IMG/VR virus record: IMGVR_UViG_3300043410_001892 | Coordinates: 248,001 to 312,000 of that record | Length of the DNA: 64,000 bases | Reading direction: 5' to 3' (one strand) | Part shown: one piece after another, positions 14,400-37,558 of the stretch | How positions within the stretch are numbered: position 1 is the stretch's first letter | Layout: every line of letters starts with the position of its first letter | Notes under the pieces: generated by a model | The model's input: the letters and a program-made list of their open reading frames with translations, nothing else | The model's database searches: none | What the model was told of the DNA's origin: nothing | Position numbers and translations under genes: made by a program

Positions 14400-14407
14400 T
14401 TATTAAA

Positions 14408-14464: not shown

Positions 14465-14468
14465 AAAC

Positions 14469-14542
14469 TGGCAGTCCCTGCAGGTATCGAACCTACGCTA
14501 GCAGAATCAAAATCTGCTGTGCTACCATTACACCAAGGAACA
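14469..14542 (-). tRNA. tRNA-Gln(TTG)
   Basis: loop TT-TTG-AT, CCA. Confidence 0.93.
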
Positions 14543-14549
14543 CTAATAT

Positions 14550-14635
14550 TGGTGGTTGCTGTTAGATTCGAACTAACGAAGCACTAAGGCGACAGATTTA
14601 CAGTCTGCTGGTTTTAACCACTCACCCAAACAACC
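14550..14635 (-). tRNA. tRNA-Tyr(GTA)
   Basis: loop CT-GTA-AA, variable arm, CCA. Confidence 0.95.
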
Positions 14636-14646
14636 ATGTTCTTTAT

Positions 14647-14880
14647 TTATACAAGTTCTTGATCGTTATGTGCAGTTTCGACTAAGTCTAATACACCTAA
14701 CTTTCTCAAACGTTTTTCTAAAACTTTCAATCTATTTCTAATCTTAGATTTGTCACGTGGACGACCTGTTTTTTCAAGTAACTCTTTAACTTGTGCTAAG
14801 TTTAAAGGTTTAAGTCTTGGGCGACCGTTACGTGTTAGTTTAGGATTAGCTGTTCTGTTTGCTTTACTAATTGTAGACAT
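14647..14880 (-). CDS. basic hypothetical protein
   Basis: 77 aa Arg/Lys-rich ORF. Confidence 0.55.
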   Translation of the reverse strand: MSTISKANRTANPKLTRNGRPRLKPLNLAQVKELLEKTGRPRDKSKIRNRLKVLEKRLRKLGVLDLVETAHNDQELV

Positions 14881-15232
14881 GTTTTTCCTTTACTTTATTA
14901 ATCATAGTGGTTAGCTGTTCATTAGTAAAATGATCAGGAACATTTATATGAAAAATGTTTCTGCCATCTTGTTTTTCAACTTGAACAATATCCTTAGTTT
15001 CTTCTACATCAATGTTTTCTACAAGTTCAATTGAAGTTGTATTTGACATTATAACTAAGTTTGCAGGTTCTACATGTTTAGCAAACGTAGTCTTAATATT
15101 TTCCATATATTCCATAGCATGTCTTGCTGGCATATTACCTACATCAACTTTAACTATTAGAATACTGTTTTCAGTTAGTTTTTGCTTATCTAAAATCTGT
15201 ATTGAATTTTCACTTAATTCTATTGTTTGCAT
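14867..15232 (-). CDS. hypothetical protein
   Basis: 121 aa ORF after a sigma70-like promoter. Confidence 0.55.
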   Translation of the reverse strand: MQTIELSENSIQILDKQKLTENSILIVKVDVGNMPARHAMEYMENIKTTFAKHVEPANLVIMSNTTSIELVENIDVEETKDIVQVEKQDGRNIFHINVPDHFTNEQLTTMINKVKEKHVYN

Positions 15233-15578
15233 ATTTGCCTTTGTTATTTAGTATGTGTATATTATACACGTTTAAAACTAGTTGTCAAGTAAATAATTTT
15301 TGTATTCTTGTTTAATTAAATCTTCAATAGCAGCACTTACATCAATACCATTTGGATTATTCATATCTTCTTTTGCTTCTTGAGTGACATTTGTTTCAAA
15401 AAACTTATCACGCCATTCTGCATAATCTAACTTATTTGCCATGTTTCTTAAAATCCTTAACTAAATGTTTAAGAATGTCGTGCTCAAGATTGATATGTGC
15501 AGTAATATTTTTAGTAGGTTCAAATGTCCATTTACCGTTTAACTTACGAGGTTTTTTTGGTAATTTAGTTTTCATTCT

Positions 15579-15761
15579 TTATCCTTTGTTTTTAAATTCT
15601 GCTGCAACATCGTCAATTGTTGCGTGATTGCCATGTGAATTAGAAATAAATTCTTCTTTTGGTTCTTCTTTTTCTTTTTTATTAAATATCTTATCCCAGT
15701 TTTCATCAAACTGTGATTTGCTAATGCCTAATGGGCGCATTCTACTACCTTTGCCTGCCAT
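15579..15761 (-). CDS. small hypothetical protein
   Basis: MAGKGSRMRP start, GGAGA RBS. Confidence 0.55.
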   Translation of the reverse strand: MAGKGSRMRPLGISKSQFDENWDKIFNKKEKEEPKEEFISNSHGNHATIDDVAAEFKNKG

Positions 15762-15783
15762 AAAATCTCCTTAACGTATAGAT

Positions 15784-15984
15784 TTAACCCCATGTTAAAC
15801 CTACAAGCATTGAATGTTTAGGATCTTTAAACTGCATCCTAACCTCTCCTTGAAAACAATGCCATTTGTAATCTTGATTATGTATCCAACCTTTTTCTCT
15901 ACACCATTTTGATATTTCTAATCCTTTAGCAAAATTACCTGGTATTGTTACATATCCATTTTCGTGTGCGTAATCTGTATTCAT
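15784..15984 (-). CDS. small hypothetical protein (F..L.W family)
   Basis: C-terminal FKDPKHSMLVGLTWG. Confidence 0.5.
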   Translation of the reverse strand: MNTDYAHENGYVTIPGNFAKGLEISKWCREKGWIHNQDYKWHCFQGEVRMQFKDPKHSMLVGLTWG

Positions 15985-16006
15985 ATTTTTATTTGTAAGG
16001 TTGTTG

Positions 16007-16070
16007 CAGGATGGGATTGAGCTTTTTTAGATCCAAATTCTAACGCTTAATTGTTTGCAGTTACCATCCT
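16007..16070 (-). ncRNA. Y-like RNA copy 7 (short, 7-nt-loop hairpin)
   Basis: AGGATGG-TA-ACTGCA...TTAGA-ATTTGGA-TCTAA...CCATCCT-G. Confidence 0.7.
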
Positions 16071-16083
16071 AAAACTTGTTTAT

Positions 16084-16210
16084 CAGAATGCATTTTAATT
16101 TTCCAGCGCGTCTACTACTTTCGCCATATGCGTTATTCAACGCATAGTAGGATTTGCACCTACACGTTATAAAACACTGGATTCCATTAAAAGTATGCAG
16201 TTAGCATTCT
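16084..16210 (-). ncRNA. Y-like RNA copy 8 with a permuted Leu-type tRNA body
   Basis: AGAATGC-TA-ACTGCA; TCCAG; T arm GTAGG-TGCAAAT-CCTAC; closed acceptor; D arm TGGCGAAAGTAGTAGACGCG; CTGGA; GCATTCT-G. Confidence 0.82.
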
Positions 16211-16214
16211 ATTT

Positions 16215-16290
16215 TGGTTGCGAAGGGTTGGAATCGAACCAACGTCCTCTGGGTTATGAGCCCAGCTATCTACCACTGATATACCTCGCA
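16215..16290 (-). tRNA. tRNA-fMet(CAT)
   Basis: CTGGG-CTCATAA-CCCAG (three G-C pairs), CCA. Confidence 0.9.
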
Positions 16291-21247: not shown

Positions 21248-21570
21248 CGTGGAAATACAGGTTCGTTACAAAAAGCATCACAACTTTCTAATCCTGCAGG
21301 TGGATCAGGAAGTTCATATAGTGATTTTAATGGAGGTGGAGGATTAAATCCAGTCATTCCGTTTTGATTGCGATATTGCGGTTTGTGTGGTGGAAGAGGA
21401 GGGGACATCGTCTTAAACGGATGCCCGTCAACAATACGTTTCATAGCATCACGGTGTTCCATCAATGCTATGCGTGTTTCACCGTGATCTATATACATTA
21501 TTTCATATCTCAACTTTTCTAATGTTGAATTGATATAATCGTATGATTCTTGTGTTAAGTTTTGATTCAT
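21214..21570 (-). CDS. hypothetical protein
   Basis: 118 aa Pro-rich ORF within the operon. Confidence 0.5.
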   Translation of the reverse strand: MNQNLTQESYDYINSTLEKLRYEIMYIDHGETRIALMEHRDAMKRIVDGHPFKTMSPPLPPHKPQYRNQNGMTGFNPPPPLKSLYELPDPPAGLESCDAFCNEPVFPRWMYTLIGRLK

Positions 21571-22877
21571 AGTCCACCTAATGCGCGTAATCGAATAGTA
21601 TCTAAACTATCATCAATCAACAGCTTACCATTGTGATAATATGTTTCTAATTGGTATTCTTCAAATCTACCACCTTGTGATTTTTTACCTGGATCAGTAA
21701 CTGGATTTTTAACAGTATCAATCCATTCATCATTGATTTTCATTGCAGAAGTTTTCTGTGCAAATGAATAAGTATCACGATTCACTTTTTGTAATAAACC
21801 ACCACCACTGCCATATACAAGTGTTTCAGCTGCATAGCCAAGTTCTTTAACCATGTGTGCTAATGCTTTCATAGATGCAGTATCAATACCATCACCTTGA
21901 ATTAAACTAACATTGTTAAGCACTTTGTAGCCTTTAGAGTTTACAGTATGTCCAAACCAGTAATCAATAACATTAAGTAATTTTGGTATTACTACTAATG
22001 GATTACCTGAGTCTGGTCGGATAACAACTTTAATACCACTTTGTTTAATAATGTGTACAAAGTGTGAACACAATGCTTCAGTATCGCGATAAATGTCATA
22101 ACCATCAAGTACAATTGAAACTATATCACCTTTTGCCATATCGTGTAGAATAGATGAAATATATTCCATTTGTTTATCATTGCCATAAGAGCATTGAACG
22201 CTGTGTTCAGTAGCAGGAATTGAGTAACCTGGCATTTTACAATTATAATACTTACGGCTAGCAGCAATTGATGCTAAGTTGTCAGTACCTCTAAAGTAAA
22301 TTAAGTGAGCTAATCCACCCATCTCTGCAGTCTCATATGAGCTTACACCGCGAGCGCCAAAGTCATGTAATGCAAATTGTAAGTTTGCTAGGTTATCAGA
22401 AGTTTCATCGTACACTTCTTTAAGTATTGCATAGTTCTCACGATCATTTGAAGCAATAGTACTTGGATACCAAACATCACGTTGCAACCATGATTCAATG
22501 TAAGATGGCAACCAGTACAACTCTGGATCGTTTGATTCAACTGTAAGAATTGGAGTTTGTGATGGAGTAGGTGTGCCTTCTAGCACTGCTTTAATAGTAA
22601 CAGGCAAGTAACCACCGTGTACATCATGAATTCTCTCCCATCCTGCGTAATTAAATGGTAATCCATGTTCAGTAAGAATCTGTTCTGCTTCAATAACATC
22701 TTCCCATTTAATTGGTTTTAGCAGATTCTTTTTAATTGCCATCTGCAAGCCAAATGGTACGATTGTTTTACCTGGCTTTCTTGCTGACAAGTAAGCAAAT
22801 TGAGCAGAAGTACCAGCTGGGTACCATGCATAGTGACTGGCTTTGTAAGAGTCGGCATTAAGAATAATATTAGACAT
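21567..22877 (-). CDS. nadV: nicotinamide phosphoribosyltransferase
   Basis: ADSYKASH, LHDFGARG, PATEHS, IRPDSG, IQGDG, GSGGGLLQKVNRDT. Confidence 0.95.
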   Translation of the reverse strand: MSNIILNADSYKASHYAWYPAGTSAQFAYLSARKPGKTIVPFGLQMAIKKNLLKPIKWEDVIEAEQILTEHGLPFNYAGWERIHDVHGGYLPVTIKAVLEGTPTPSQTPILTVESNDPELYWLPSYIESWLQRDVWYPSTIASNDRENYAILKEVYDETSDNLANLQFALHDFGARGVSSYETAEMGGLAHLIYFRGTDNLASIAASRKYYNCKMPGYSIPATEHSVQCSYGNDKQMEYISSILHDMAKGDIVSIVLDGYDIYRDTEALCSHFVHIIKQSGIKVVIRPDSGNPLVVIPKLLNVIDYWFGHTVNSKGYKVLNNVSLIQGDGIDTASMKALAHMVKELGYAAETLVYGSGGGLLQKVNRDTYSFAQKTSAMKINDEWIDTVKNPVTDPGKKSQGGRFEEYQLETYYHNGKLLIDDSLDTIRLRALGGL

Positions 22878-22887
22878 TGTTACCTCG

Positions 22888-23829
22888 TTATTTCAAATTA
22901 AATTTTATCTTAGCAAATGTATTAGTCATTGAGCTAATAATATCTCTATGATCATGGAACATATCTAAGTCGTTAAGTACAGTAGTTAATGGAAACCATT
23001 GTGCATCAATTGCATCGTCATTGGCTACTGTTTGCATAGGTTCATCAACTACAAACATTTTACAGTATGTAACTCTAAGAATACCACCGCTGTCTCGACG
23101 TACTGAATCAAACAACTGAGTCTTGTATGCTATGCTACTGACAGTAATACCTGTTTCTTCTAGTAGTTCGCGATCAGCGCATTGATCAAATGTTTCATTA
23201 GCATTCTTAAATCCGCCTGGCAATGCCCATTTGTTTTTACCTGGAGCAGTTTTTCTTTTAATTAGTAAAACTTGATTGTCATTAGTTATTACTAATGCAT
23301 CACTACAACAAAATGTAAGTGTTTCTGGAAACGGATAACTTGCAAACATCTGTTTCTCGTTTTTAAAATAGTTGTAGTCTTCTTGTGCTAGTTCAGGTAA
23401 TTGATTATTTTCTGCTAGTTCAGTTCTAATTTGTGTACCTGAAATAGTTGAAACTGGATCAACTTCTATGTATTCAAATCCTTGAAACCAAGACAAGTAT
23501 AAGTTATCTGGTTTAGTATGTCCATATAAGCAAACGTCGTGATCTTCTGAATGCATACGAATAATATAACATGTTTGCGATATCCATTTGTTATCATTAT
23601 ACAAGTAGTCGTTAAGTGGTTCCACAATAACATTAGGAAACTTCTGTTTAACATTGTCATGTCGTTCTGCATAGGACCATGGATTCTTAATAGTATTTGA
23701 TTGATTAGCTGAACCAATTAAAACTAATTGTTTATCAGTATTTTTAATCATAGTCTGTATGATTAGTTCGTGTCCTTCATGCATTGGTTGTAATCTACCA
23801 ATAAAAACACCTAATTTAGGTTTTATCAT
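22888..23829 (-). CDS. bifunctional NMN adenylyltransferase / Nudix ADP-ribose pyrophosphatase (NadM-Nudix)
   Basis: GRLQPMHEGH, ISGTQIR, WALPGGF...RELLEETG. Confidence 0.92.
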   Translation of the reverse strand: MIKPKLGVFIGRLQPMHEGHELIIQTMIKNTDKQLVLIGSANQSNTIKNPWSYAERHDNVKQKFPNVIVEPLNDYLYNDNKWISQTCYIIRMHSEDHDVCLYGHTKPDNLYLSWFQGFEYIEVDPVSTISGTQIRTELAENNQLPELAQEDYNYFKNEKQMFASYPFPETLTFCCSDALVITNDNQVLLIKRKTAPGKNKWALPGGFKNANETFDQCADRELLEETGITVSSIAYKTQLFDSVRRDSGGILRVTYCKMFVVDEPMQTVANDDAIDAQWFPLTTVLNDLDMFHDHRDIISSMTNTFAKIKFNLK

Positions 23830-25616: not shown

Positions 25617-25659
25617 AAATCCTCCTAACGTATGTTATGAAAAAGCACCCCGGAGGGTG

Positions 25660-26010
25660 CTTAGTTGTATTTTGGTTAACAAGGCATACATGCCCCGGAG
25701 GGGTAGGTTATTAAGCTACCATGTCAGCTGCTTCCAAAGAGAAGTCAACTGTCATATACTCGAATTTAGATGCTTTTGCGTCTATAAGTTTTGCGCTGTT
25801 TAGGACAGTCACCTCACCTGTTGCCGTCTCCATTATCTCACCCAATCGAAACCATGACAGCCCCATTATAAAACACACTAGCACTTCCCTTTTAGGGGGC
25901 AGGAAGTTTATGGCTATGGCCCCACTCTAATACCTCTAATGTGTTTTATGGTGGAACTGGGGGGAGTCGAACCCCCGTCTTGAATGCCTTCACTTTGAAG
26001 GAATTACAAC
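25660..26010 (-). ncRNA. ssrA: circularly permuted two-piece tmRNA
   Basis: acceptor piece ending GACGGGGGTTCGACTCCCCCCAGTTCCACCA (25949) precedes coding piece starting GGGGCTGTCATGGTTTCGA (25864); tag ORF 25711-25779. Confidence 0.9.
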
Positions 26011-26095
26011 AATAATAAGAACACTAATAAATCTAATGTTCTTATTATTATTTAGTATGTGTACATTATACACTAATAAAACAGTTTGTCAAGTA

Positions 26096-27312: not shown

Positions 27313-27594
27313 ATGCATGAAATATTTAAGCTAATAGGTGATTTAGGTTTCCCAATTGCAGTAGCGTTTGCAGGTGGATACTTTGTTTATTTAACTATTC
27401 AATTATTATTAGGCGGTGTATTAGGAGCTATTAAAGGAATGGCTGGTATTATTACTGCTCTTGATAATCGTGTTAAAACAATGAATCATGACGTTGTGCG
27501 TATAGACACAATCGTATCAAATGCACTTGGACTTAAACCAGATGTAGATCGTATTGCTCGTGCAGACGGTAAAAATGATGCTCGGAGGGACTAA
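27313..27594 (+). CDS. small membrane protein, paralog of 27781
   Basis: IGDLGFPIAVA TM segment followed by LDNRVKTMNHDVVRID. Confidence 0.7.
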   Translation: MHEIFKLIGDLGFPIAVAFAGGYFVYLTIQLLLGGVLGAIKGMAGIITALDNRVKTMNHDVVRIDTIVSNALGLKPDVDRIARADGKNDARRD

Positions 27595-27794
27595 TGCATT
27601 ACATAGATTATGTATGGCAGTTGTTTCCATGGGGTATGATTTTAGATGAAGAAATTAATCTTGATGATTTAAAATGGGAAGATGGGGACTATTTTAGGTT
27701 AGAACGTACTACTGACGGCAGTCGTCCTGTGTTAAGAAAAGTTAAAGTAATTAGAAAGTATAAACCAGGAGAAGAATCAAATGGAAATGAGTGA
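27594..27794 (+). CDS. hypothetical protein
   Basis: translationally coupled (TAATG). Confidence 0.5.
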   Translation: MHYIDYVWQLFPWGMILDEEINLDDLKWEDGDYFRLERTTDGSRPVLRKVKVIRKYKPGEESNGNE

Positions 27795-28170
27795 AATAGT
27801 TGGACTTGTAAACAAGTATGGATTTCCAATTGTTATGGCAGTGGGAATGGGATATATTATACGTTATGTGTGGGAATGGTCTACTAAAGAAGTTAAGCCA
27901 GTTATTAGTGAAGCTAACACTGTATTGATCGCACTTATTGATCGTATTCGTATGTTAGATAATGATTTGATCCGATTAAATCAAAAGGTAAATACAGTAT
28001 TGCATTTACGTGGTAAAATTATTGAAAGTGATCGAGTTATGGAACAAGTTAAAGTTGATCGAGAAGCTTCAAAACAATTTGATAAAGCAGTACGTATGGA
28101 TGACCCTAAACTACCAAAGAAGAAAGGAAAATCTGAAGACGACAGTACTGCAGCAGCTGGAGAAAGTTAA
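27781..28170 (+). CDS. small membrane protein, paralog of 27313
   Basis: VNKYGFPIVMA TM segment followed by LIDRIRMLDNDLIRL. Confidence 0.7.
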   Translation: MEMSEIVGLVNKYGFPIVMAVGMGYIIRYVWEWSTKEVKPVISEANTVLIALIDRIRMLDNDLIRLNQKVNTVLHLRGKIIESDRVMEQVKVDREASKQFDKAVRMDDPKLPKKKGKSEDDSTAAAGES

Positions 28171-28172
28171 GA

Positions 28173-28415
28173 ATGAAAATAAGTGAGTTATTAGAAGGTA
28201 TTGATTTAGATGAAGCGAGAATACCTACTAGTAAAGAATTGAAAAATGCTTTGATGAAGAAAGGTTATACACCGAGTGAAGGTGGAGAACATATGAAGTT
28301 TCATGCACCTGACAAGTCACATCATATATCAATGCCTCGAGGGCCAAAACCGTTAAGTATTGGCCTTGCAAGGTCTGTTATGAAAAAAGCGGGAATTACT
28401 GACGCTGATTTTTAA
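28173..28415 (+). CDS. HicA-like mRNA interferase domain, no HicB neighbour
   Basis: LMKKGY..GGEHMKF..ISMPRG.K.LSIGLARSVMKKAG. Confidence 0.75.
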   Translation: MKISELLEGIDLDEARIPTSKELKNALMKKGYTPSEGGEHMKFHAPDKSHHISMPRGPKPLSIGLARSVMKKAGITDADF

Positions 28416-29105
28416 TTACTTCTGTTGTAAGCTACGATATTCTTCTACAGTAATAAATTCTACTAATTTTTCTATTTTATATTTTGTAGTGTTATTTGCT
28501 TTAGCGCAAGCATGTATTCCATGATATACTTCACCGTTATAGCGACAAGGTTTAGAATGTACTAAAGCGTGTTCAACACCGTATGTTTGCTGTACACCTG
28601 ACTTTCCTTTATTCCACGGTTCTTTACCTTTGTTAAAATGTTCTTGTGTTTCCCATCGCTTACGAAGTCCTTCAGAAGTTTTTGGTTTAGGTATTCCTTT
28701 CTGTTTTCCTTTTGCATTCTCGCTAATTTTTTTCCTAATCTCTAACGTATGCTTTTTACCGTAGTATCCGTTTTTCTCGCCTGTGAGTTTTTCTTTTTTA
28801 CTCATAGCTTCTTGCCATGCAGGACAACTAGACATATCCCCGCCATCGCCTGATTCTTTTTTTAAATTAGCCCATTCTTTGCTTTCTACAATATTCCATA
28901 AATCACTATAATAAATACCTTTTTCTATCAATTCTTCTTTACTGTTAGTTTCTAATAGTATTTCTGTAGTATAGTTGTAACCATGTTTTTTAAGGTGTCT
29001 AATCCACATAGTTCCGCTACCTGGATACCTATGCGGATCTTGTTTTGTAGTTTTTCCTAAATATTTTAAACCCGTTTCGTTGTGTGTTTTAACGTACAAA
29101 TACAT
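28416..29105 (-). CDS. GIY-YIG (Seg-like) homing endonuclease with NUMOD3 repeats
   Basis: YLYVKTHNETGLKYLGKT...YPGSG, NGYYGKKHTLEIRKKIS. Confidence 0.85.
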   Translation of the reverse strand: MYLYVKTHNETGLKYLGKTTKQDPHRYPGSGTMWIRHLKKHGYNYTTEILLETNSKEELIEKGIYYSDLWNIVESKEWANLKKESGDGGDMSSCPAWQEAMSKKEKLTGEKNGYYGKKHTLEIRKKISENAKGKQKGIPKPKTSEGLRKRWETQEHFNKGKEPWNKGKSGVQQTYGVEHALVHSKPCRYNGEVYHGIHACAKANNTTKYKIEKLVEFITVEEYRSLQQK

Positions 29106-29149
29106 TATAGTTCTCCTTTAATGTATTTATTCTCATGTGCAATGAATAG

Positions 29150-31195
29150 TTATTTTTCCGTAGCTATCCATTCTCCATTCCAGTTATCACCTAAATCTTG
29201 TTGTTTCATAAAGTCACAACGTTCAATCCATATTTTGTAGTATTTGTCCATTTGTCCACCAAAGGTGCCTTTCATAGTTTTACACATTGCAGCAGCTTCA
29301 TCAAACTTCTTTTGTTTATATAAGTCGTGCATGAGGTTGTGTAAGTCTTTATCTTTACTATAATCAGCACCTTTGGTGCGTAATGCAGTATAGATTAAGT
29401 CTGCAACTGTTTTACCTTTTGGTTGTAAGTTATCTAACAGTAAGTAAAAGAAATCGTCTTTAGTTCTGTTATATGTTTCAGCACCAATGATACATAGTAC
29501 ACCGTATGCTTTACAACGTGCTTCTAAACGAGCAGCAGTTGAAACCATATCACCTAAGATATCATAGCTGTGTCTATCACTAGAACCCATTTCGCCAATG
29601 AAGCCTATTCCGCTATTACACCCCCAGCCCATAGCTGCGGGTGGTAACCCTTTGGCTTCCATAATCTTAGTATATGTATCGACTGCGTCTAGCATTTCTA
29701 AGCCAACTTTAACAATAGTACGAGCATGATTTCCATCATCAATTGGAGCACCGTGAATATGCATTGATGCATCTCCTACGTACTTAATAACCATACCTTG
29801 ACTATCCATAATAGGTTTACTAATACTATCCATATATCCGTTCATGTATAGACCTAGACCTGCAACATCATCGCCAAAGTGTTCACCAATTGGAGTAAAT
29901 CCGCGCAAATCTGAGAACATAACTGAAACATCTTTACGTACACCTTGTTTAATTAAGTCTGGATTTTCTTGTAGCATTTCAACTACTTTTGGAGAGCAGT
30001 AGCCAGCAAATTGTTTTTTAATAGCTAGTTTTTGAGTTAGTTCATCCACAAACTTAACAGTATAAGCATGAGCATAAACAAGAGTAAATCCAGATACAAC
30101 AAATGTTGCATCCAAAAGAATATTATAAGTGGTGAAAGCATAACTAAAAGCATAAGGTATACCACCAATGAAAGCAATAATAGGAACAAAGCCGTATCTC
30201 CATCTTGTTAAAAATATAGATCCAATTGCAAGTACAATAAAACCTAATAGTTCAGCACCGTCTGCATAATCAGGTCGTACAATATTAGTACCGGATACTA
30301 ATGTGTCTAAAACCGCACCTTGAACTTGATGCGGAAACTGTTCTCCTCTAGCAGTTGCAACTGGGTTATTGAGTCCCCTTGCAGTAAGTCCGACAATGAC
30401 GATCTTTCCGCCAAAGAATTCTGGGAGATCAGTGATTGGAAAACTTTCAGGTTGGTGGGACCAGTCAATCCAAACTCTACTATAGGGGTCTGTTGCAATT
30501 TTTCCAAACTTAGGTATTCTGACAGCTTCGACTCCAATGTCTGAGATTTTAACTTGGAAACTTGGATCTCCACTTGCGACTCTAAGTGTGTCCAGTCCAA
30601 GGCTTGGATAGAGTTTTCCTTTTGATGAAATAACCATTGGCATTCTTCGCACGACGCCATCAAGTTCTGGGAAAGTGTTAACAATACCAGCACCAGCAAT
30701 AACATCATTAAGTTCTTTAGTATTTGCTTGTATGTTTTCATAATTTACAGTAAAAGGTTGATCTTCGTTACCGATTACACTAACGCCTGGACGAAATGCA
30801 ATAGTATCTGATTTTATAGGTTCGTTAGTTCCAGTTTGCGGTAAGATTACAGGAACTGTTGTCATAAGTTTAGCTAAGACTGGGTCTTTTTTAAATCTAT
30901 CAGCATCTGGCATAAAGATGTTGAATACAACTAAGCCAGCACCTCTTGAATACAACTCTTCAATTATTTGAGCATATATATCACGTGAGAATGGGAATTG
31001 ACCATACTTCTCTAATGCAGCATCGTCGATGTTTACTGTAGCAACAGATGATTCTTGTATAGGTTTACTTGTAATAAGTGTATCAAAGTATCTTAATCTC
31101 ATACTTTCTACAAATGATGGATCTGCAATTCTTATAGCTGCAACTAGCATAAGAGTTAAAAGAGCAGTCCATGGGTTTAATAATATTTTCTTCAT
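29150..31195 (-). CDS. CHASE2-domain membrane class III adenylate/guanylate cyclase
   Basis: VNIDDAALEKYGQFPFSR (CHASE2), three TMs, FSDLRGFT, KYVGDA, YDILGDMVSTAARLE. Confidence 0.92.
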   Translation of the reverse strand: MKKILLNPWTALLTLMLVAAIRIADPSFVESMRLRYFDTLITSKPIQESSVATVNIDDAALEKYGQFPFSRDIYAQIIEELYSRGAGLVVFNIFMPDADRFKKDPVLAKLMTTVPVILPQTGTNEPIKSDTIAFRPGVSVIGNEDQPFTVNYENIQANTKELNDVIAGAGIVNTFPELDGVVRRMPMVISSKGKLYPSLGLDTLRVASGDPSFQVKISDIGVEAVRIPKFGKIATDPYSRVWIDWSHQPESFPITDLPEFFGGKIVIVGLTARGLNNPVATARGEQFPHQVQGAVLDTLVSGTNIVRPDYADGAELLGFIVLAIGSIFLTRWRYGFVPIIAFIGGIPYAFSYAFTTYNILLDATFVVSGFTLVYAHAYTVKFVDELTQKLAIKKQFAGYCSPKVVEMLQENPDLIKQGVRKDVSVMFSDLRGFTPIGEHFGDDVAGLGLYMNGYMDSISKPIMDSQGMVIKYVGDASMHIHGAPIDDGNHARTIVKVGLEMLDAVDTYTKIMEAKGLPPAAMGWGCNSGIGFIGEMGSSDRHSYDILGDMVSTAARLEARCKAYGVLCIIGAETYNRTKDDFFYLLLDNLQPKGKTVADLIYTALRTKGADYSKDKDLHNLMHDLYKQKKFDEAAAMCKTMKGTFGGQMDKYYKIWIERCDFMKQQDLGDNWNGEWIATEK

Positions 31196-31818
31196 TATTG
31201 TCCTTGTTGTACTGATATTGGTGCGCATCCGCCTGCAGTAGCGCAGTTAGAGTTTATAGAATAAATTTGTTGAGTAGCACCGCTTTGTCTTAGGTTTAAA
31301 CTAGCAGGCTGTCCAGATAGAATAACTTCAGACATATGAGGTGCTGCTCCTTCTTGTATAATACTAACATTCTTATTACCACCTGAAAGATTAACTGTTG
31401 CATAATGATTACCTTCATCAGTTTGGTGAATGCTAAGTAAGTTATTATCATCAGCTACTGTAGCAAATATACCTTTCCCAAAGCTAGTAGCTGTAGTTGT
31501 AGTTTGTTCAAGATCTATAGTATTAGTGTTACCAGTTGTTGATAAATCAACAAAATTAGTTTGCAAATCGTTAGTTCCAATTTGATTGATTGTTACACTA
31601 TTACTACTACCCACACCTGTATAGTTAGTGTAGTTATTTTTTGTACCAATTTGTTCAACGGTAATTGTATTATCATTACCAGATTGCATAATAGTTGATT
31701 GATTATCAGAAGTTGGTCTTGACACAAACGTCATTACTTTAGCAACATCTGCAGGGTTTGCAGGCGGTAATGCATAACTTACTGAGGTTGCTAATAATAA
31801 AAGAAACATAAATCTCAT
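31195..31818 (-). CDS. secreted curlin-repeat-like protein
   Basis: repeated Q-x-G-x-x-N (MQSGNDN, EQIGTKN, NQIGTND, HQTDEGN). Confidence 0.75.
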   Translation of the reverse strand: MRFMFLLLLATSVSYALPPANPADVAKVMTFVSRPTSDNQSTIMQSGNDNTITVEQIGTKNNYTNYTGVGSSNSVTINQIGTNDLQTNFVDLSTTGNTNTIDLEQTTTTATSFGKGIFATVADDNNLLSIHQTDEGNHYATVNLSGGNKNVSIIQEGAAPHMSEVILSGQPASLNLRQSGATQQIYSINSNCATAGGCAPISVQQGQ

Positions 31819-32897
31819 TTGTGTAATACTCCGTTAGTTTGTGTAATATTTACTGTATTGCCGCCAAACCCTCCTTGACCTATAAGAGCCGATGACAGTG
31901 TGTTATCTTGTGTCACTGATACTGTAGTGTTTGAATTATATCCTTGTGTTTTAACTTCTGAATAATGATTCATAGGTGAAATTCTGTAAGCAATTGCTTT
32001 ACCCTTTTGTTCACCTTCTCCATCCGGATTTTCCCACATTAGGCAAACAGTAGTAATTGGATTACATCCATTATCAAATTTAAAGTTTAATATTGCTCGA
32101 ATATGTGCGTCCATTGTTTCTTGAGTCTTTGATACTTGATTTGCTAACCTACGCGTAGCTTCTTCTTCAACTTCTTCCTGTTCTTTATCCCATTTAGTTT
32201 TAGCTGCTTCTTTAACAGCTTTTGTAAGTTCAGGAGGTTTAAGTAGAATCAACGTATTGTTGATCTTTGATTCAAGTACACTAACAATAGTTGGAGGACT
32301 AGGCATAACAGTACGACTTTGAACATACGTTGCATGGAATGCTTGATCTAATACTACTTTACCTGCTTCATTCTCAACTTCAATTTGTCCTGACTTGCAT
32401 TGATTTTCTTCAAGTTCGTATTCTTTAACTTGCTTGTCATCTTTGCAACTTGGTAACAGTACAATTAAAGATTGACCAGCTTCGTCAACTGTCATGGAAA
32501 AGTCAGTACCTCTAACTGCAATAGTAGCAGTAGGAGTTTGAATACCAACTTGTTGTGGATTAGCTTTAGCTATCTGCCCACTTGCATAACGTACAGTTCC
32601 CATACCAACTTTTAATGCAAGTTTACCTGCATCAGATTGCTTTGGATCGTAAACAAAGTCATCTATAACTAATCGACTATTTTCTGTTACTTTAACTTTT
32701 GTATCGTCTTTGAATATTAAATTGCTAACGCAACTACCAGTAGAATACGCATCCATACTTTCTATTGATGCGCCTTTATCACCAGTAAGTTTTTCTTTAT
32801 TACGTTCAATATTACACGCAGTTCCTTTGGCATCAGATACTGAACCAATACCTGCGTGTACATTTGTAACTAAAAGAAAAAATAGTAAGATCCACAT
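31815..32897 (-). CDS. FecR-domain periplasmic protein
   Basis: FKDDTKVKVTENSRLVIDDFVYDP, IQTPTATIAVRGTDF. Confidence 0.88.
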   Translation of the reverse strand: MWILLFFLLVTNVHAGIGSVSDAKGTACNIERNKEKLTGDKGASIESMDAYSTGSCVSNLIFKDDTKVKVTENSRLVIDDFVYDPKQSDAGKLALKVGMGTVRYASGQIAKANPQQVGIQTPTATIAVRGTDFSMTVDEAGQSLIVLLPSCKDDKQVKEYELEENQCKSGQIEVENEAGKVVLDQAFHATYVQSRTVMPSPPTIVSVLESKINNTLILLKPPELTKAVKEAAKTKWDKEQEEVEEEATRRLANQVSKTQETMDAHIRAILNFKFDNGCNPITTVCLMWENPDGEGEQKGKAIAYRISPMNHYSEVKTQGYNSNTTVSVTQDNTLSSALIGQGGFGGNTVNITQTNGVLHK

Positions 32898-33676
32898 TAT
32901 CTTGCAACAGCTGATTTTTCGCCTACTATACCTAATGTTGCATCATTAGTTGAATGTACAGTAATTGTATTGTTATTACCGGTAGTATTGATATCAATCA
33001 TAGAATCATTAGACCCTTGTTGCTGTGTAACAATTGAGTTAAAGTCACCAGTGATTAGTTGTGTAAGTTGATGTCCAATACCGCCATTATCTTGTTCGTT
33101 TATAAAAGAGTTAAAGTTACCATTTGCGGTAGTAGTATCAATTCCATTCATACTATTTAATCTTGTAGTAATTTGGTTAGACGAACCAGTTATCGCAATT
33201 GTACTATGTATATTATCTTTAGTTAGTGATTGAATAATAAAGTTTGTATCTCCACTAACTGTTTCATTTACTATGTTAGTAGATGACGGAGTTCCTGTAA
33301 CACCAATAGTAAGTAACGTTTGATTTTGCATTCCTGTTATCAGTGATGAGTAAATGTTATTGTTACCATTGATGTTATATTGTGCCCAGTTCCCGTCGCC
33401 TGTTTGATTAAGAGTTACTTGGTTAGTATTTCCTGTAATCGTTGCATAATTCGTTGTGGCTGCAGCACTTGGTACAAACGAAGTAATAATGTTGTTAGCA
33501 CCGTAAGATATAGGAGAAACAAGTGTTGTGCCACCAACATTATTAGTTCCGCCAATCTGATCAATAATAATTGTGTTTGTATTACCAAGTTGTTCAATGT
33601 ATACATTATTAGTTCCTGTTGGTCCAGCTGCAAGTACAGAATTACTGAGTAGGAGTAGAACTAATAACTGTTTCAT
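32897..33676 (-). CDS. secreted curlin-repeat protein
   Basis: signal peptide MKQLLV; NNVYIEQLGNTN, QIGGTNN, QTGDGN, QQQGSND repeats. Confidence 0.78.
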   Translation of the reverse strand: MKQLLVLLLLSNSVLAAGPTGTNNVYIEQLGNTNTIIIDQIGGTNNVGGTTLVSPISYGANNIITSFVPSAAATTNYATITGNTNQVTLNQTGDGNWAQYNINGNNNIYSSLITGMQNQTLLTIGVTGTPSSTNIVNETVSGDTNFIIQSLTKDNIHSTIAITGSSNQITTRLNSMNGIDTTTANGNFNSFINEQDNGGIGHQLTQLITGDFNSIVTQQQGSNDSMIDINTTGNNNTITVHSTNDATLGIVGEKSAVAR

Positions 33677-34499
33677 TGCTGGTCTCCTTAGATTGTTCTT
33701 TAAAAGACCAATGTCCTTTTCTCGCTCCTTCTTTAATAGTTTCAAGCACTGCAGCTTGAATTGCCTTATTAGTTGCCTTATTAATACTTTCATTAATACT
33801 TCCACCTATTTCTGTTTCTAACATCTTTGTGTCAGAAGAGAACATTCTTAATACACCTACTTTATCCATATAACTTAGAACAGTTTTTGTTACTACTACC
33901 GATGTTAAAATTTCACCAGAAGTAACAGAAACTACTCTCAAGCTAACTGTAACTGTATCGCTTTGGTATTGCGTTTCACCCCCAATACCAAAGATCCTAA
34001 CACCAGCACCTCCTGTGACTGTGTTAGAGTCGTACCCAACAATTGCACCTTCTGCAATAATACCAGCAAAAGTCATAGCAGGTAACGGTGTTGCAGCATC
34101 CTTTCCTTGGAACTGCTCGCGGGTTTGACGAATCATTTGCCGCTCTTTAATTAGATTATCTAATCCAACTCTTTCTAGTACTATAAACCATCGATTATTA
34201 CCTACTTCTTTTAATGCTTTAATTAAGTAATTTTCTGCACCTTGGGTAACAGCTGAACTTAAACTAGCAATATTTGGAACTGATTTACGTTGCCCAGTTT
34301 TATCATTAAATCCGTATACTGCAATTGGTATAGGACCAGTAGTAGGCGGTGCAAGTAAGTTTTCTTCTTTTTTCATAAAAGGAGTATCATCAATAATTGG
34401 ATCATCAAATTGTTCACCTGTTATGAATTTTTCAATTGTGCTAGTAGTAGCGCATCCGTAAAGTAATATGGTTGTTATTAGTATGAGTAGTTTTTTCAT
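33642..34499 (-). CDS. csgG: curli secretion channel lipoprotein CsgG
   Basis: LYGC lipobox, VYGFNDKTGQRK, SSAVTQGA, VLERVGLDNLIKERQMIR, EGAIVGYDSN. Confidence 0.92.
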   Translation of the reverse strand: MKKLLILITTILLYGCATTSTIEKFITGEQFDDPIIDDTPFMKKEENLLAPPTTGPIPIAVYGFNDKTGQRKSVPNIASLSSAVTQGAENYLIKALKEVGNNRWFIVLERVGLDNLIKERQMIRQTREQFQGKDAATPLPAMTFAGIIAEGAIVGYDSNTVTGGAGVRIFGIGGETQYQSDTVTVSLRVVSVTSGEILTSVVVTKTVLSYMDKVGVLRMFSSDTKMLETEIGGSINESINKATNKAIQAAVLETIKEGARKGHWSFKEQSKETSNETVISSTPTQ

Positions 34500-34507
34500 G
34501 CTTTACC

Positions 34508-34981
34508 TTAAAAATAGAAAGTGCCCGCAGGTACTTTCATCAATGTTGTTTGATCTGGATTAAGATTATTTGTAATACTAATAACGATCATTCCTTGATC
34601 AGAGCCTTCACCTAAACTCCATGAAACTGTACTCCCTCCAAGATCGGGAATAGTTCCACATGTTATACCAGGTTCGGTACATTTAGTTCCGTCAGCAAAC
34701 ATACTATCAGTAAGTTGTTTTGCTAACTGTGAATATATTCTTGATTCTAAATTTGATAGAAATTTAGCTTGTGGAGTATTAAGTGCAAGAGCGTCTGCTT
34801 TGGCTTGTATTGCATCAGCAAGTGCTTTATGTTTTTCAACATTTTGCTGTTCAAGTTGTTGAATAGTTAGAGTATGATTACTATAACCAATGCCGCTAAA
34901 TGCTGGGCTATTAAAGCTATGTTGGAGTTCAGCAGAATATGCTGTTGTTGATACTAGTAGTAATGCTAATAGTTTTTTCAC
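34508..34981 (-). CDS. csgF: CsgF-like curli assembly protein
   Basis: AELQHSFNSPAFSG N-terminus, LESRIYSQLAKQL; upstream of csgG. Confidence 0.7.
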   Translation of the reverse strand: MKKLLALLLVSTTAYSAELQHSFNSPAFSGIGYSNHTLTIQQLEQQNVEKHKALADAIQAKADALALNTPQAKFLSNLESRIYSQLAKQLTDSMFADGTKCTEPGITCGTIPDLGGSTVSWSLGEGSDQGMIVISITNNLNPDQTTLMKVPAGTFYF

Positions 34982-35624: not shown

Positions 35625-35975
35625 ATGAGAATATTTGAAATTACTGCACACATGTCAATAGATCCGGATAACTACGGAACTACTATACAAAGTTGGAATA
35701 AGAAGGAACGACATAAAGTTAAAGAAATTCCAATGTCACAACTTATAACATTTGAGCATCCTGATAAGATGAAAGATCCTGCAAGTAAGCAGAATATGAT
35801 GAAGATTGCTAAGGCATATCATATGGGAGAACGTATACCACCTATCATGGTTAAAAAACATGATGATAAGTATATGATATTAGATGGGCATCATAGATAC
35901 TTTGCTGCAAGACTTGCAGGGATAAGATCTATCCCTGCAATCATTATACCTGATGATAAAATTACTATTGATTAA
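35625..35975 (+). CDS. ParB/sulfiredoxin-like domain protein with MRIFEI N-terminus
   Basis: IPPIMV...YMILDGHHRYFAA; TAAATA-CTAC-ATG. Confidence 0.8.
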   Translation: MRIFEITAHMSIDPDNYGTTIQSWNKKERHKVKEIPMSQLITFEHPDKMKDPASKQNMMKIAKAYHMGERIPPIMVKKHDDKYMILDGHHRYFAARLAGIRSIPAIIIPDDKITID

Positions 35976-36846
35976 GTTTTGATTTAACGTATTCAACAAT
36001 TTCAAAACCAACATTAGTATTGCAGAAGTGATCAAATCCATTAAACCCTGGATTAGAATTAGCTTCGCAAACTTTAAAACCGTTTTTATCAAATAAGAGA
36101 TCAACACCTGCTATTTCTAAACCAAGAGCTTGTGTTGTTGCTAATGCAATTGATTCTATTTCTGAAGTAACTGGATATGGTTCGCCTTTCCCACCAATTG
36201 TAATATTAGCACGAAAATCACCAGATGGAGCAGTTCGCTTCATTGCACCGATGACTTTATTACCTACTACAATAACTCTTAGATCAACACCTGGTTGATC
36301 TCCAAGATACTCTTGTACCAGAAGTTTCTTTTGGTTATCAAGATTTTTTAAGAATTCGATTAATTTTCGATACTCGTGCTCACTATGACACAAGTAAACA
36401 CCTTCTCCAAAACTACCAACTAAGACTTTAATTACGCAGGGAAATCCTATATGTGTTGCGATTAAGTCGTTAGTGATGGGAAAGTGTACAAGCATAGTAG
36501 TCGGAACTGCTATATTAGCTTGTGATAAGATTTGACTAGTATGAAATTTATTCTGTACTATGTTTACACTGTCGCTTGAATTTATACATGGAATGCCATG
36601 TAATTCAAAATATCTAACTACGGCCAATTCAACTGAAGTAATGCCTGCACCTAGTCTTACTAATACTAAGCTAGGGAGATCAAAATCTTCACCAAGATAT
36701 TTAATAGGTTGATTTATAACAATATCAAAGTTATTAAATTGCCGCACAGATGCATCGATACCAGCAGCTATAAAATTAGATAATAATTTAGCAGTTTCGT
36801 ATTCGATTAAAGTGTGTTTTGTAAGAATTATAACTGTTTGTTTCAT
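35965..36846 (-). CDS. RimK-family ATP-grasp ligase
   Basis: QNKFHT, VIKVLVGSFGEGV, DLRVIVVG, DFRANITIGG, GVDLL, EANSNPG. Confidence 0.92.
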   Translation of the reverse strand: MKQTVIILTKHTLIEYETAKLLSNFIAAGIDASVRQFNNFDIVINQPIKYLGEDFDLPSLVLVRLGAGITSVELAVVRYFELHGIPCINSSDSVNIVQNKFHTSQILSQANIAVPTTMLVHFPITNDLIATHIGFPCVIKVLVGSFGEGVYLCHSEHEYRKLIEFLKNLDNQKKLLVQEYLGDQPGVDLRVIVVGNKVIGAMKRTAPSGDFRANITIGGKGEPYPVTSEIESIALATTQALGLEIAGVDLLFDKNGFKVCEANSNPGFNGFDHFCNTNVGFEIVEYVKSKLNQ

Positions 36847-36880
36847 AGTGTATTTATCTGTATAAATACACTATTCAACT

Positions 36881-37558
36881 TTACATTTCAGGAAATAGAC
36901 ATTCGTGTACGAATAATTTAACATCTTCGTCACTTAGTCCAAGTGCAGCCATTACTCGAGGGGTGTGCGGTATTTGTTTTTGTTGTATAGCATAAAAGTT
37001 TTGTGCTTGCACCGTGCTTTTAACTGTGTTATTTGTACGCGCAACGTTTGAAACATAGTAGTTGCTTGTTGTTTGTACAATGCTATTTATTTGTGTAATT
37101 TCATCTTGTTTTTGAATATTACTTGCTGCAATTATATGTGGGGAAAATATATCCTTCCCCCACTCAGGAATTTCTCGAACCTTTTCCCAAGTAAGTTTGT
37201 TTACTTCTTGGCTAAAAAAATCTATCATTGGATGATCAACATCACCTGCAGGACTGTAATCATGAAAGAATCCAGTAATCTTATTACGTCCTGCAACAAT
37301 GTCGCAACCAAAGATAGGAGCCGGGTTATGAATGTGAGGAAAAATACAGCAATGCATCATCCATAACCCGTTACCATCTGAAGCATCTACTACATTAAGA
37401 TGCGCTCTACGATATGCATTGCTAGTCCAAACTCTGTTGATCCAGCCATTATAGTTAAATCGTTCTAAGCCAGGTTCTTCAATTTCAGTACCTGACTGAT
37501 TAAACAATTCTTCTAAATGATGCTGGACTTTAATTAGTTGTGTCTTTAGCTCAGTCAT
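36881..37558 (-). CDS. pcyA: ferredoxin-dependent bilin reductase (PcyA/PcyX-like)
   Basis: RRAHLNV, MMHCCIFP...PIFGCDIV, PEWGKDIFS, Q-x-x-IPHTPR. Confidence 0.82.
   Translation of the reverse strand: MTELKTQLIKVQHHLEELFNQSGTEIEEPGLERFNYNGWINRVWTSNAYRRAHLNVVDASDGNGLWMMHCCIFPHIHNPAPIFGCDIVAGRNKITGFFHDYSPAGDVDHPMIDFFSQEVNKLTWEKVREIPEWGKDIFSPHIIAASNIQKQDEITQINSIVQTTSNYYVSNVARTNNTVKSTVQAQNFYAIQQKQIPHTPRVMAALGLSDEDVKLFVHECLFPEM

What the first reader, a model, noticed from the sequence alone, without database searches (positions are those of the whole stretch)
27313..34981. Phage-borne csgF-csgG-curlin-FecR-curlin-CHASE2 adenylate cyclase module
Seen: contiguous, overlapping genes for an outer-membrane CsgG/F channel, two curlin-repeat proteins, a FecR protein and an inner-membrane class III cyclase with intact-looking motifs. 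Two paralogous small TM proteins are encoded convergently next to it. Established: csgF/csgG are reported in some marine phages. Inference: this is a complete trans-envelope signalling chain that makes cAMP/cGMP in the infected cell, for example sensing superinfection or surface contact, or perturbing cyclic-nucleotide signalling, rather than an amyloid biofilm system.
Basis: partly seen in the sequence, partly recalled or inferred. Interest (0 to 1): 0.62.

Follow-up and report, generated by a model that had tools for sequence, protein, structure and literature searches.

The report
Phage curli-FecR-cyclase module, already described
A 372-kb freshwater jumbo phage carries a real, tightly conserved gene block for a curli-type outer-membrane channel, two fibre-repeat proteins, a periplasmic FecR-like protein and a membrane adenylate cyclase. 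The same block is already published for marine SAR11 and OM43 phages, so this is a new carrier, and its function is still unproven.

Summary
Six abutting minus-strand genes encode CsgF, CsgG, a curlin-repeat protein, a FecR-domain protein, a second curlin-repeat protein and a CHASE2 class III cyclase. Two paralogous small hydrophobic proteins lie convergently downstream.

The block is strongly co-conserved. In 30 CsgG-seeded viral loci with full flanks I found CsgF, curlinA and FecR in 30, curlinB in 29 and the cyclase in 27.

It is not new. The same gene order is annotated in cultured phages Melnitz and HTVC008M and was analysed by Wittmers et al. 2022.

New here:
- The carrier is a freshwater Rak2/PA5oct-like jumbo phage clade.
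- The two small proteins (phrog_18771) belong to the module. They show no histidine-kinase domain and were not found in the bacteria searched.
- One Caulobacteraceae chromosome carries the six-gene operon.
- The cyclase keeps both metal Asp, the Lys and the Arg. It has Asp/Ser where relatives have Thr/Asn, a change that arose at least twice.

A trans-envelope signalling reading is plausible. FecR–CHASE2 gene pairs are common in bacteria, and Sinorhizobium NsrA–CyaK is a precedent. "Rather than amyloid" is not supported, because the curlin repeats are conserved. The complex prediction gave no answer.

The parts
34508..34981 (-). CsgF homologue (157 aa) with a signal peptide; first gene of the operon
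   Evidence: Pfam CsgF E 7.3e-7, 29.8 bits, above the cut-off of 25.8. phrog_35372 E 8e-31. Present in 30 of 30 CsgG-seeded full-flank viral loci.
33642..34499 (-). CsgG outer-membrane lipoprotein channel (285 aa), lipobox LLYGC
   Evidence: Pfam CsgG E 1.8e-48. E. coli CsgG structures E 1.2e-50 over the full length. G15 and C16 are invariant in relatives. The E. coli constriction residues Tyr/Asn/Phe align to Val/Ser/Leu (my reading of the alignment).
32897..33676 (-). curlinA: curlin-repeat protein (259 aa from MKQLL) with a signal peptide
   Evidence: Curlin_rpt 21.5 bits in the genome scan, above the cut-off of 20.7. N23, Y26, Q29, Q40 and G42 are invariant across phage and bacterial relatives. 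AlphaFold2 model is all strand-turn-strand, pTM 0.80. There is no significant PDB match; the weak hits are beta-helix proteins.
31815..32897 (-). Periplasmic FecR-domain protein (360 aa): signal peptide, N-terminal FecR/CCSSD-like domain, long helix 235-272, C-terminal beta domain ending in a curlin-like strand
   Evidence: Pfam FecR E 1.2e-8. AlphaFold2 pLDDT 88.9. The N-domain matches the PupR C-terminal cell-surface signalling domain 6ovk, E 2.4e-4. The C-terminal GG-x-T-I-T-I-x-Q motif, with Q353 present in at least 90% of relatives, is kept from the Caulobacteraceae operon to the phages.
31195..31818 (-). curlinB: second curlin-repeat protein (207 aa) with a signal peptide; relatives range from 188 to 844 aa
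   Evidence: Pfam Curlin_rpt E 1.6e-7, 31.6 bits. Genome scan 25.4 bits. Length range.
29150..31228 (-). CHASE2 + class III nucleotidyl cyclase (692 aa; 681 aa if it starts at 31195)
   Evidence: Pfam CHASE2 E 1.4e-33 and Guanylate_cyc E 1.3e-12. Bacterial adenylate cyclase structures up to E 4.6e-19. D440, K482, D486, R567 and K604 are conserved; D556/S563 stand in place of Thr/Asn. Hydrophobic segments at 14-32, 322-340 and 347-365.
27781..28170 (+). Small protein 'TM2' (129 aa), phrog_18771: hydrophobic N-terminus plus a predicted helical tail; part of the module
   Evidence: phrog_18771 E 7e-29. Paralogue of TM1. Sits next to the module in Melnitz, HTVC008M and the jumbo-phage clade. Only weak holin-like leads. 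The hydrophobicity scan found no segment above threshold.
27313..27594 (+). Small membrane protein 'TM1' (93 aa), phrog_18771; the most conserved gene of the block (80-95% identity across the clade)
   Evidence: phrog_18771 E 7e-28. Hydrophobic stretch 7-47. 41 of 42 TM1-seeded full-flank viral loci have the cyclase within 10 kb. No HisKA or HATPase match at E <= 1.
27594..27794 (+). 66-aa ORF between TM1 and TM2. Conserved in part of the jumbo-phage clade only, so its membership of the module is uncertain
   Evidence: Found in 29 of 42 TM1-seeded loci. Absent from Melnitz and HTVC008M. No Pfam or PHROG match.

Best explanation
This is a copy of the known phage 'curli (type VIII secretion) + FecR + adenylate cyclase' module, here on a freshwater jumbo myovirus.

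Most likely working:
1. The six minus-strand genes are made as one operon.
2. CsgF, CsgG, both curlins and the FecR-like protein are exported by Sec.
3. CsgG/CsgF build an outer-membrane channel with no CsgE gate.
4. The curlins are its substrates and form beta-solenoid fibres on the infected cell.
5. The periplasmic FecR-like protein is a two-domain connector. Its N-domain works with the CHASE2 domain of the inner-membrane cyclase. Its C-domain ends in a curlin-like strand and faces the channel or the curlin subunits.
6. The state of the channel or fibre, or something entering through it, sets cAMP synthesis in the cytoplasm.
7. cAMP acts on host receptors, because the phage encodes no cNMP-binding domain.

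The two phrog_18771 proteins are phage-specific additions of unknown role.

Shown: gene content, order, co-conservation, domain identities and residue conservation. Inferred: export, fibre formation, FecR-CHASE2 contact, the direction of signalling and the product.
For: - Domains.
- The same order is annotated in Melnitz and HTVC008M and described in PMC9599517.
- Co-conservation from three seeds. Cyclase-seeded: 134 viral contigs encode a cyclase relative, and wherever the flank suffices FecR, CsgG and CsgF are present too. TM1-seeded: 41 of 42 loci have the cyclase. CsgG-seeded, 30 loci: CsgF 30, curlinA 30, FecR 30, curlinB 29, cyclase 27.
- A bacterial chromosomal operon, CsgF-CsgG-curlin-curlin-FecR-cyclase, sits in a Caulobacteraceae MAG flanked by metabolic genes.
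- FecR-domain genes lie next to CHASE2 cyclases or kinases in bacteria without curli genes (PMC5192318; SMc02177 next to cyaD1, PMC5498481).
- CyaD1 lacking its CHASE2 domain makes cAMP constitutively (PMC5498481).
- Outer-membrane NsrA signals to CHASE2 cyclases (PMC13001267, PMC7529298).
- Catalytic residues are conserved in about 150 sequences.
- The phage has no CsgE, no CsgC and no cNMP-binding domain.
- Marine versions are transcribed (PMC9599517).
Against: - No experiment exists for any phage copy.
- Buchholz et al. saw no clumping of Melnitz-infected OM43 (PMC9004378).
- The complex prediction of CHASE2 with the FecR N-domain scored 0.00, which counts as no answer.
- The transition-state Asn is Ser in this clade, which in mammalian cyclase lowers turnover (my recollection, not checked here).
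- The E. coli constriction residues of CsgG are replaced.
- In S. meliloti the FecR-domain gene smc02177 was not needed for plant-signal perception (PMC5498481).
- Per PMC9599517, some marine podoviruses lack the cyclase, so cAMP cannot be the sole point of the block.
- The host and its cAMP receptors are unknown.
Confidence: 0.5

Rival explanations
1. Pure trans-envelope sensor. The channel, the curlins and FecR serve only as an antenna for the CHASE2 cyclase. No functional amyloid is made. The purpose is cAMP signalling in the infected cell, for example sensing lysate, virions or contact.
For: - CHASE2 is an extracytoplasmic input domain with a cytoplasmic output.
- FecR-CHASE2 pairing occurs without curli genes in bacteria.
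- The NsrA-CyaK precedent responds to a protein released from lysed cells (PMC7529298).
- No CsgE gate is present.
- The cyclase is present in 27 of 30 and 41 of 42 sampled loci of this clade.
- No clumping was seen with Melnitz (PMC9004378).
Against: - Two secreted curlin-repeat proteins are kept in every lineage with the amyloid repeat pattern intact.
- curlinB expands to 844 aa in relatives, as fibre or adhesin subunits do.
- Some marine phages keep the channel, curlin and FecR without the cyclase (PMC9599517).
- No phage-encoded cAMP receptor was found.
Confidence: 0.2
2. Lysis-timing device. CsgG/CsgF act as a gated outer-membrane pore or secretin-like element. The two small hydrophobic proteins act as holin/antiholin-like partners. 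The cyclase would tune the timing (extends Buchholz et al. 2022).
For: - Weak holin-like leads for TM1/TM2: Pfam YvrJ E 0.004, holin phrog_4898 E 0.0011, Atlas YvrJ 0.85 and Holin_BhlA 0.83.
- They are always linked to the module and were not found in bacteria.
- Proposal in PMC9004378.
Against: - All the holin leads are below significance.
- TM1 is 80-95% conserved, which is unusual for holins (my general knowledge).
- The bacterial operon works without these proteins.
- This reading does not explain the curlins or FecR.
- An outer-membrane pore does not depolarise the inner membrane.
Confidence: 0.1
3. Uptake pore. The ungated CsgG channel imports nutrients or cofactors for phage replication, with FecR by analogy to iron-citrate signalling (one option in PMC9599517).
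For: - No CsgE was found.
- The constriction residues are smaller than in E. coli.
Against: - The FecR-like protein lacks the anti-sigma and transmembrane part, and no TonB-dependent transducer or ECF sigma factor was seen among the genes examined around it.
- This reading does not explain the curlins or the cyclase.
Confidence: 0.05

Closest known systems
Pelagiphage T8SS-FecR-adenylate cyclase module (Wittmers et al. 2022, PMC9599517), annotated in Methylophilales phage Melnitz MZ577097 and Pelagibacter phage HTVC008M KC465899
   Same: - Same genes in the same order: CsgF, CsgG, curlin, FecR, curlin, cyclase.
- The same two small upstream genes occur.
- The cyclase is 45% identical to Melnitz and 34% to HTVC008M.
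- All module-linked cyclases form one clade (SH-aLRT 100).
   Different: - The carrier is a 372-kb freshwater phage. Its capsid protein is nearest to Sinorhizobium phage Phosso, Vibrio phage 2.275.O and PA5oct, not to the 140-150-kb marine Kyanoviridae or the podoviruses.
- The two small genes are moved to a convergent position downstream of the cyclase.
- A homing endonuclease and a HicA-like ORF are inserted.
- The small genes were called histidine kinases in the paper. I equate them by position only, and I find no kinase domain.
Escherichia coli / Salmonella curli system (csgBAC-csgDEFG)
   Same: CsgG (E 1e-50 to solved structures), CsgF, and secreted curlin-repeat subunits.
   Different: - No CsgE and no CsgC.
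- No CsgD was seen among the genes examined.
- The constriction residues differ.
- A FecR-domain protein and a CHASE2 cyclase lie inside the operon.
Sinorhizobium meliloti NsrA - CyaD1/CyaD2/CyaK - Clr cascade
   Same: - An inner-membrane CHASE2 class III cyclase receives a signal through an outer-membrane protein.
- A FecR-domain gene (smc02177) lies beside cyaD1 (PMC5498481, PMC13001267).
   Different: - The outer-membrane partner there is the NsrA beta-barrel, not CsgG/CsgF.
- There are no curlins.
- The cAMP receptor Clr is known there, whereas the phage encodes none.
- Cyclase identity to alphaproteobacterial CHASE2 cyclases is only 24-29%.
Burkholderia 'BiofilmReg' operon: LysM-FecR protein + CHASE2 histidine kinase (PMC5192318)
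   Same: A periplasmic FecR-domain protein is encoded directly beside a CHASE2 sensor.
   Different: The output is a histidine kinase with a response regulator. The FecR protein carries a LysM domain. There are no curli genes.
FecR/PupR anti-sigma regulators of cell-surface signalling
   Same: The fold of the periplasmic domain (6ovk E 2.4e-4).
   Different: There is no cytoplasmic anti-sigma domain or membrane anchor. A cleavable signal peptide, a helical spacer and a C-terminal beta domain are present instead.

Membership tests
Published phage T8SS-FecR-AC module | CsgF, CsgG, curlin, FecR, (curlin), cyclase in that order on a phage genome | tested here: met
   for the window. for Melnitz and HTVC008M. 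PMC9599517 for the description.
Published phage T8SS-FecR-AC module | One or two small genes (called 'HK' in the paper) linked to csgF | tested here: met
   TM1/TM2 homologues lie directly upstream of csgF in Melnitz and HTVC008M. In the window they are convergent downstream of the cyclase. Equating them with the paper's 'HK' rests on position only.
Curli / type VIII secretion system | CsgG lipoprotein channel | tested here: met
   Pfam E 1.8e-48; PDB E 1.2e-50; invariant Cys16.
Curli / type VIII secretion system | CsgF | tested here: met
   Pfam 29.8 bits, above the cut-off of 25.8.
Curli / type VIII secretion system | Secreted curlin-repeat subunit(s) | tested here: met
   Curlin_rpt above the cut-off in both genes. 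Signal peptides read from the sequence. Repeat pattern conserved.
Curli / type VIII secretion system | CsgE periplasmic gate/adaptor | tested here: not met
   No PF10627 match in the 372-kb genome; the E. coli control matched.
Curli / type VIII secretion system | CsgC-type chaperone | tested here: not met
   No PF10610 match. CsgH was not tested.
Curli / type VIII secretion system | Extracellular amyloid fibres are formed | not testable with these tools
   There is only a predicted strand-turn-strand model.
Class III nucleotidyl cyclase (active) | Two metal-binding Asp | tested here: met
   D440 is invariant in every alignment made. D486 is invariant among the nine phage copies aligned and present in at least 90% of the 61 sequences aligned.
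Class III nucleotidyl cyclase (active) | Base-specifying Lys plus Asp/Thr (ATP type) | tested here: met
   K482 and D556. Relatives have Thr or Ser at position 556.
Class III nucleotidyl cyclase (active) | Transition-state Asn and Arg | tested here: not met
   R567 is present, but the Asn is Ser563 in 82 unique sequences of this type, while 31 phage/bacterial relatives keep Asn. The Asp/Ser state arose at least twice on the tree. Activity is therefore uncertain, not excluded.
CHASE2 sensor proteins | Periplasmic CHASE2 domain between an N-terminal TM and further TMs | tested here: met
   Pfam E 1.4e-33, residues 25-334. Hydrophobic segments at 14-32, 322-340 and 347-365.
FecR-type anti-sigma factor | Periplasmic FecR domain | tested here: met
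   Pfam E 1.2e-8; PupR fold match.
FecR-type anti-sigma factor | N-terminal cytoplasmic anti-sigma domain and membrane anchor | tested here: not met
   The protein starts with a signal peptide and the FecR domain begins near residue 18. It is a FecR-domain periplasmic protein, not an anti-sigma factor.
Histidine kinase (for TM1/TM2) | HisKA/DHp and HATPase_c domains | tested here: not met
   The proteins are 93 and 129 aa. No such Pfam hit at E <= 1 in 14 members. They fall in phrog_18771, of unknown function.

The most novel reading that the evidence does not exclude
The module is a phage-installed outside-in sensor. An ungated CsgG/CsgF channel with surface curlin fibres, a periplasm-spanning FecR-like connector and the CHASE2 cyclase would report an extracellular cue as cAMP. 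Candidate cues are proteins from lysed neighbours (as uL2 is for NsrA-CyaK), other virions, or cell contact. The phage-specific phrog_18771 pair would couple this to the timing of lysis. The twice-evolved Thr/Asn to Asp/Ser active site would mark a changed catalytic property.
Probability: 0.12. Interest if true: 0.8.

Novelty: new member of a known kind. Interest (0 to 1): 0.4.

Why it matters
The block is abundant. More than 590 IMG/VR stretches encode a CsgG relative, and more than 130 encode the cyclase. PMC9599517 reports it at all 65 ocean virome stations sampled.

It now spans three unrelated phage lineages and both marine and freshwater habitats, yet nobody knows what it does.

It would give infected cells a secretion channel, surface fibres and a second-messenger enzyme that the known hosts lack. 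It is also a natural case of a CHASE2 sensor with an obvious candidate input, and CHASE2 ligands are still largely unknown.

The points added here narrow the experiments:
- a bacterial operon counterpart exists;
- the small proteins are not kinases;
- the cyclase active site has a derived variant;
- the FecR-like protein has a two-domain build.

Tried and rejected
- **Complex prediction.** Complex prediction of CHASE2 (residues 34-326) with the FecR N-domain (16-232), using my own alignments, scored 0.00. The verdict was 'no answer', which is neither for nor against binding.
- **Near-identical DNA.** A megablast search in cultured phages found no match.
- **curlinA fold.** Foldseek against the PDB gave no significant hit, only weak beta-helix proteins.
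- **CsgF in the PDB.** The sequence search found nothing useful.
- **Phage-encoded cAMP receptor.** No PF00027 match.
- **Expression.** No RNA runs hold the stretch.
- **Promoters and terminators.** The scan found no more sites than in shuffled sequence.
- **Histidine-kinase reading of TM1/TM2.** Rejected.
- **Holin reading.** Kept only as a weak lead.
- **High-identity 'bacterial' hits.** Most are phage contigs binned into MAGs of unrelated phyla. Only L092 has bacterial flanks.
- **Garnerone et al. 2018 (NsrA).** Not held in the library.
- **The large representative protein search.** Not used.


Full report
**1. What is there**

The window is bases 248001-312000 of a 372,173-bp IMG/VR virus record with direct terminal repeats. 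It is a phage:
- it has a T4-type Gp23 capsid gene (E 9e-96);
- it has 11 tRNAs and a permuted tmRNA;
- it has RNA ligases, NAD-salvage genes, tail-fibre and virion proteins.

The capsid protein is nearest to Sinorhizobium phage Phosso (77%), Vibrio phage 2.275.O, Pseudomonas PA5oct and Yersinia fHe-Yen9. That places the phage in the Rak2/PA5oct-like jumbo group. Near-identical DNA occurs in freshwater and aquatic metagenomes.

**2. The genes**

On the minus strand lie:
- CsgF, 34508-34981;
- CsgG, 33642-34499;
- curlinA, 32897-33676;
- a FecR-domain protein, 31815-32897;
- curlinB, 31195-31818;
- a CHASE2 class III cyclase, 29150-31228, which probably starts at 31195.

Neighbouring genes abut or overlap, apart from an 8-nt gap between csgF and csgG, which suggests one operon.

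CsgF, curlinA, the FecR-like protein and curlinB start with signal peptides. CsgG has a lipobox (sequence). CsgG matches solved E. coli CsgG at E 1e-50.

The genome has no CsgE, no CsgC and no further curlin genes.

Convergent on the plus strand are two paralogous small proteins, 27313-27594 and 27781-28170. Both belong to phrog_18771. A HicA-like ORF and a homing endonuclease lie in between. They occur only in the closest relatives.

**3. It is a conserved block**

Three independent seeds give the same picture.
- *Cyclase seed.* 134 IMG/VR contigs encode a cyclase relative, many of them 200-370 kb. The 80 best are 52-100% identical. Wherever the flank suffices, FecR, CsgG and CsgF are present too.
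- *TM1 seed.* 41 of 42 loci with full flanks have the cyclase within 10 kb.
- *CsgG seed.* Of 30 full-flank loci, CsgF, curlinA and FecR are in 30, curlinB in 29, the cyclase in 27, TM2 in 25 and TM1 in 22. Most of the shortfalls fit long curlinB genes pushing neighbours out of the 10-kb flank.

Two arrangements recur: the colinear order TM1-TM2-CsgF...cyclase, and the window's convergent order.

**4. It is already known**

The cultured phages Melnitz (host OM43) and HTVC008M (host SAR11) carry the same six genes in the same order, and they are annotated as such. Homologues of TM1 and TM2 lie directly upstream of csgF in both.

Wittmers et al. 2022 (PMC9599517) described the module in marine myo- and podoviruses. 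They included FecR, the cyclase and one or two upstream 'histidine kinases'. They showed transcription in metatranscriptomes and proposed an alphaproteobacterial origin with transfer between virus families.

Buchholz et al. 2022 (PMC9004378) proposed a lysis-timing pore and saw no clumping of infected cells.

**5. What this analysis adds**

(a) *A third viral lineage and a freshwater habitat*.

(b) *The small proteins.* They show no kinase domain at E <= 1. They have only weak YvrJ/BhlA-holin-like leads. They were not found in the one bacterial genome that carries the operon, and only one weak hit appeared in 401 alphaproteobacterial genomes. TM1 is the most conserved gene of the block.

(c) *A bacterial counterpart.* An 82-kb Caulobacteraceae MAG contig carries CsgF-CsgG-curlin-curlin-FecR-cyclase. 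Methylmalonyl-CoA mutase, acyl-CoA dehydrogenase, TauD and other metabolic genes flank it. The block has slightly lower G+C than its flanks. So FecR and the cyclase can sit inside a bacterial curli operon.
   - The operon is rare: only that genome had a full-length module-type FecR among the 401 sampled.
   - Its cyclase nests among phage copies (SH-aLRT 100), so the direction of transfer is open.
   - Other high-identity 'bacterial' hits are phage contigs binned into MAGs.

(d) *FecR-CHASE2 pairs without curli genes.* In other Alphaproteobacteria a FecR-domain gene lies beside the CHASE2 cyclase with no CsgG. In some loci a TPR/SlipAM outer-membrane barrel gene lies upstream. This matches the Burkholderia FecR + CHASE2-kinase operon (PMC5192318) and S. 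meliloti smc02177-cyaD1 (PMC5498481).

(e) *The cyclase active site.* D440, K482, D486, R567 and K604 are conserved. The window's clade and Melnitz have Asp556/Ser563. Other phage copies and the bacterial operon have the class IIIb-type Thr/Asn. HTVC008M and free alphaproteobacterial cyclases have Ser/Asn. On an IQ-TREE tree built without these two columns, the Asp/Ser state needs at least two origins. That argues for a selected variant rather than decay. The Lys/Asp pair points to ATP.

(f) *The FecR-like protein.* It folds with high confidence (pLDDT 88.9) into three parts:
   - an N-domain like the PupR cell-surface signalling domain;
   - a 38-residue helix;
   - a small C-terminal beta domain. 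Its last strand resembles a curlin half-repeat and is conserved from the bacterial operon to the phages.

(g) *curlinA.* It keeps invariant Asn/Tyr/Gln/Gly repeat positions across all lineages. It is predicted as regular strand-turn-strand beta structure.

**6. Mechanism**

The best reading is an integrated system. A curli-type channel and its fibre subunits are coupled, through the periplasmic FecR-like connector, to a CHASE2 cyclase. The cyclase turns an envelope or surface state into cAMP.

The direction, periplasm to cytoplasm, follows from the domain order of the cyclase. Two findings in S. meliloti support it:
- removing CHASE2 makes CyaD1 constitutive (PMC5498481);
- CHASE2 cyclases respond to a signal passed through the outer-membrane protein NsrA (PMC13001267, PMC7529298).

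The contact between FecR and CHASE2, fibre formation and the product are all inferred. The one complex prediction gave no answer.

Its exclusion of an amyloid role is not supported.

**7. Verdict**

This is a real and well-conserved feature, and a new member of a published kind. The function remains open and is worth experiments, but the finding itself is not a discovery.

Noticed in passing
window 25638-26062 (-): Permuted (two-piece) tmRNA. Rfam beta_tmRNA 113.5 bits and tmRNA_permuted 116.6 bits, and ARAGORN gives a tag peptide. Melnitz also carries a phage ssrA near its curli genes (PMC9004378). The betaproteobacterial type may hint at the host.
   Followed up: partly
window 10894-16290 (-): Cluster of 11 tRNA genes: Gly, Pro, Ser x2, Thr, Asn, Met x2, Glu, Gln, Tyr.
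   Followed up: no
window 28173-28415 (+): HicA-like toxin ORF (Pfam E 6.5e-8) with no obvious HicB partner, abutting TM2. It is present only in the closest relatives of this phage.
   Followed up: no
window 28416-29105 (-); L005 8380-9003: Homing endonuclease (NUMOD3, phrog_314) wedged downstream of the cyclase. In relatives L005 and L009 a 38%-identical copy sits inside the module, between curlinB and the cyclase. So the block tolerates mobile insertions.
   Followed up: partly
window 35965-37558 (-): RimK-type ATP-grasp ligase followed by a ferredoxin-dependent bilin reductase, directly upstream of the module. The bilin reductase is also near the module in many relatives (54-62% identity).
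   Followed up: no
window 21567-23829 (-): NAD salvage pair: nicotinamide phosphoribosyltransferase and an NMN adenylyltransferase/Nudix fusion.
   Followed up: no
window 54474-63878 (-): A single 3134-aa ORF next to virion structural genes. Not examined.
   Followed up: no
L016-L074 (curlinB and CsgG relatives): curlinB relatives vary from 188 to 844 aa, and the window's 207 aa is among the shortest. Many CsgG relatives in the clade are 390-440 aa, compared with 285 aa here.
   Followed up: no
L100 5687-12178; L110 6151-12253: Neomegalonema and Hyphococcus loci have three genes in a row: a TPR + SlipAM outer-membrane barrel gene, an 800-970-aa FecR-domain gene and a CHASE2 cyclase. This is a possible general 'outer-membrane translocon + FecR protein + CHASE2' design.
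   Followed up: partly
L084-L090, L122: Phage contigs carrying the module, with TM1/TM2 and other phage genes, are deposited inside MAGs labelled Chitinophagaceae, Luteolibacter, Rhodobacteraceae, Bacteroidetes, Legionellales and Pirellulales. This is probably mis-binning and could mislead host or origin inference.
   Followed up: partly
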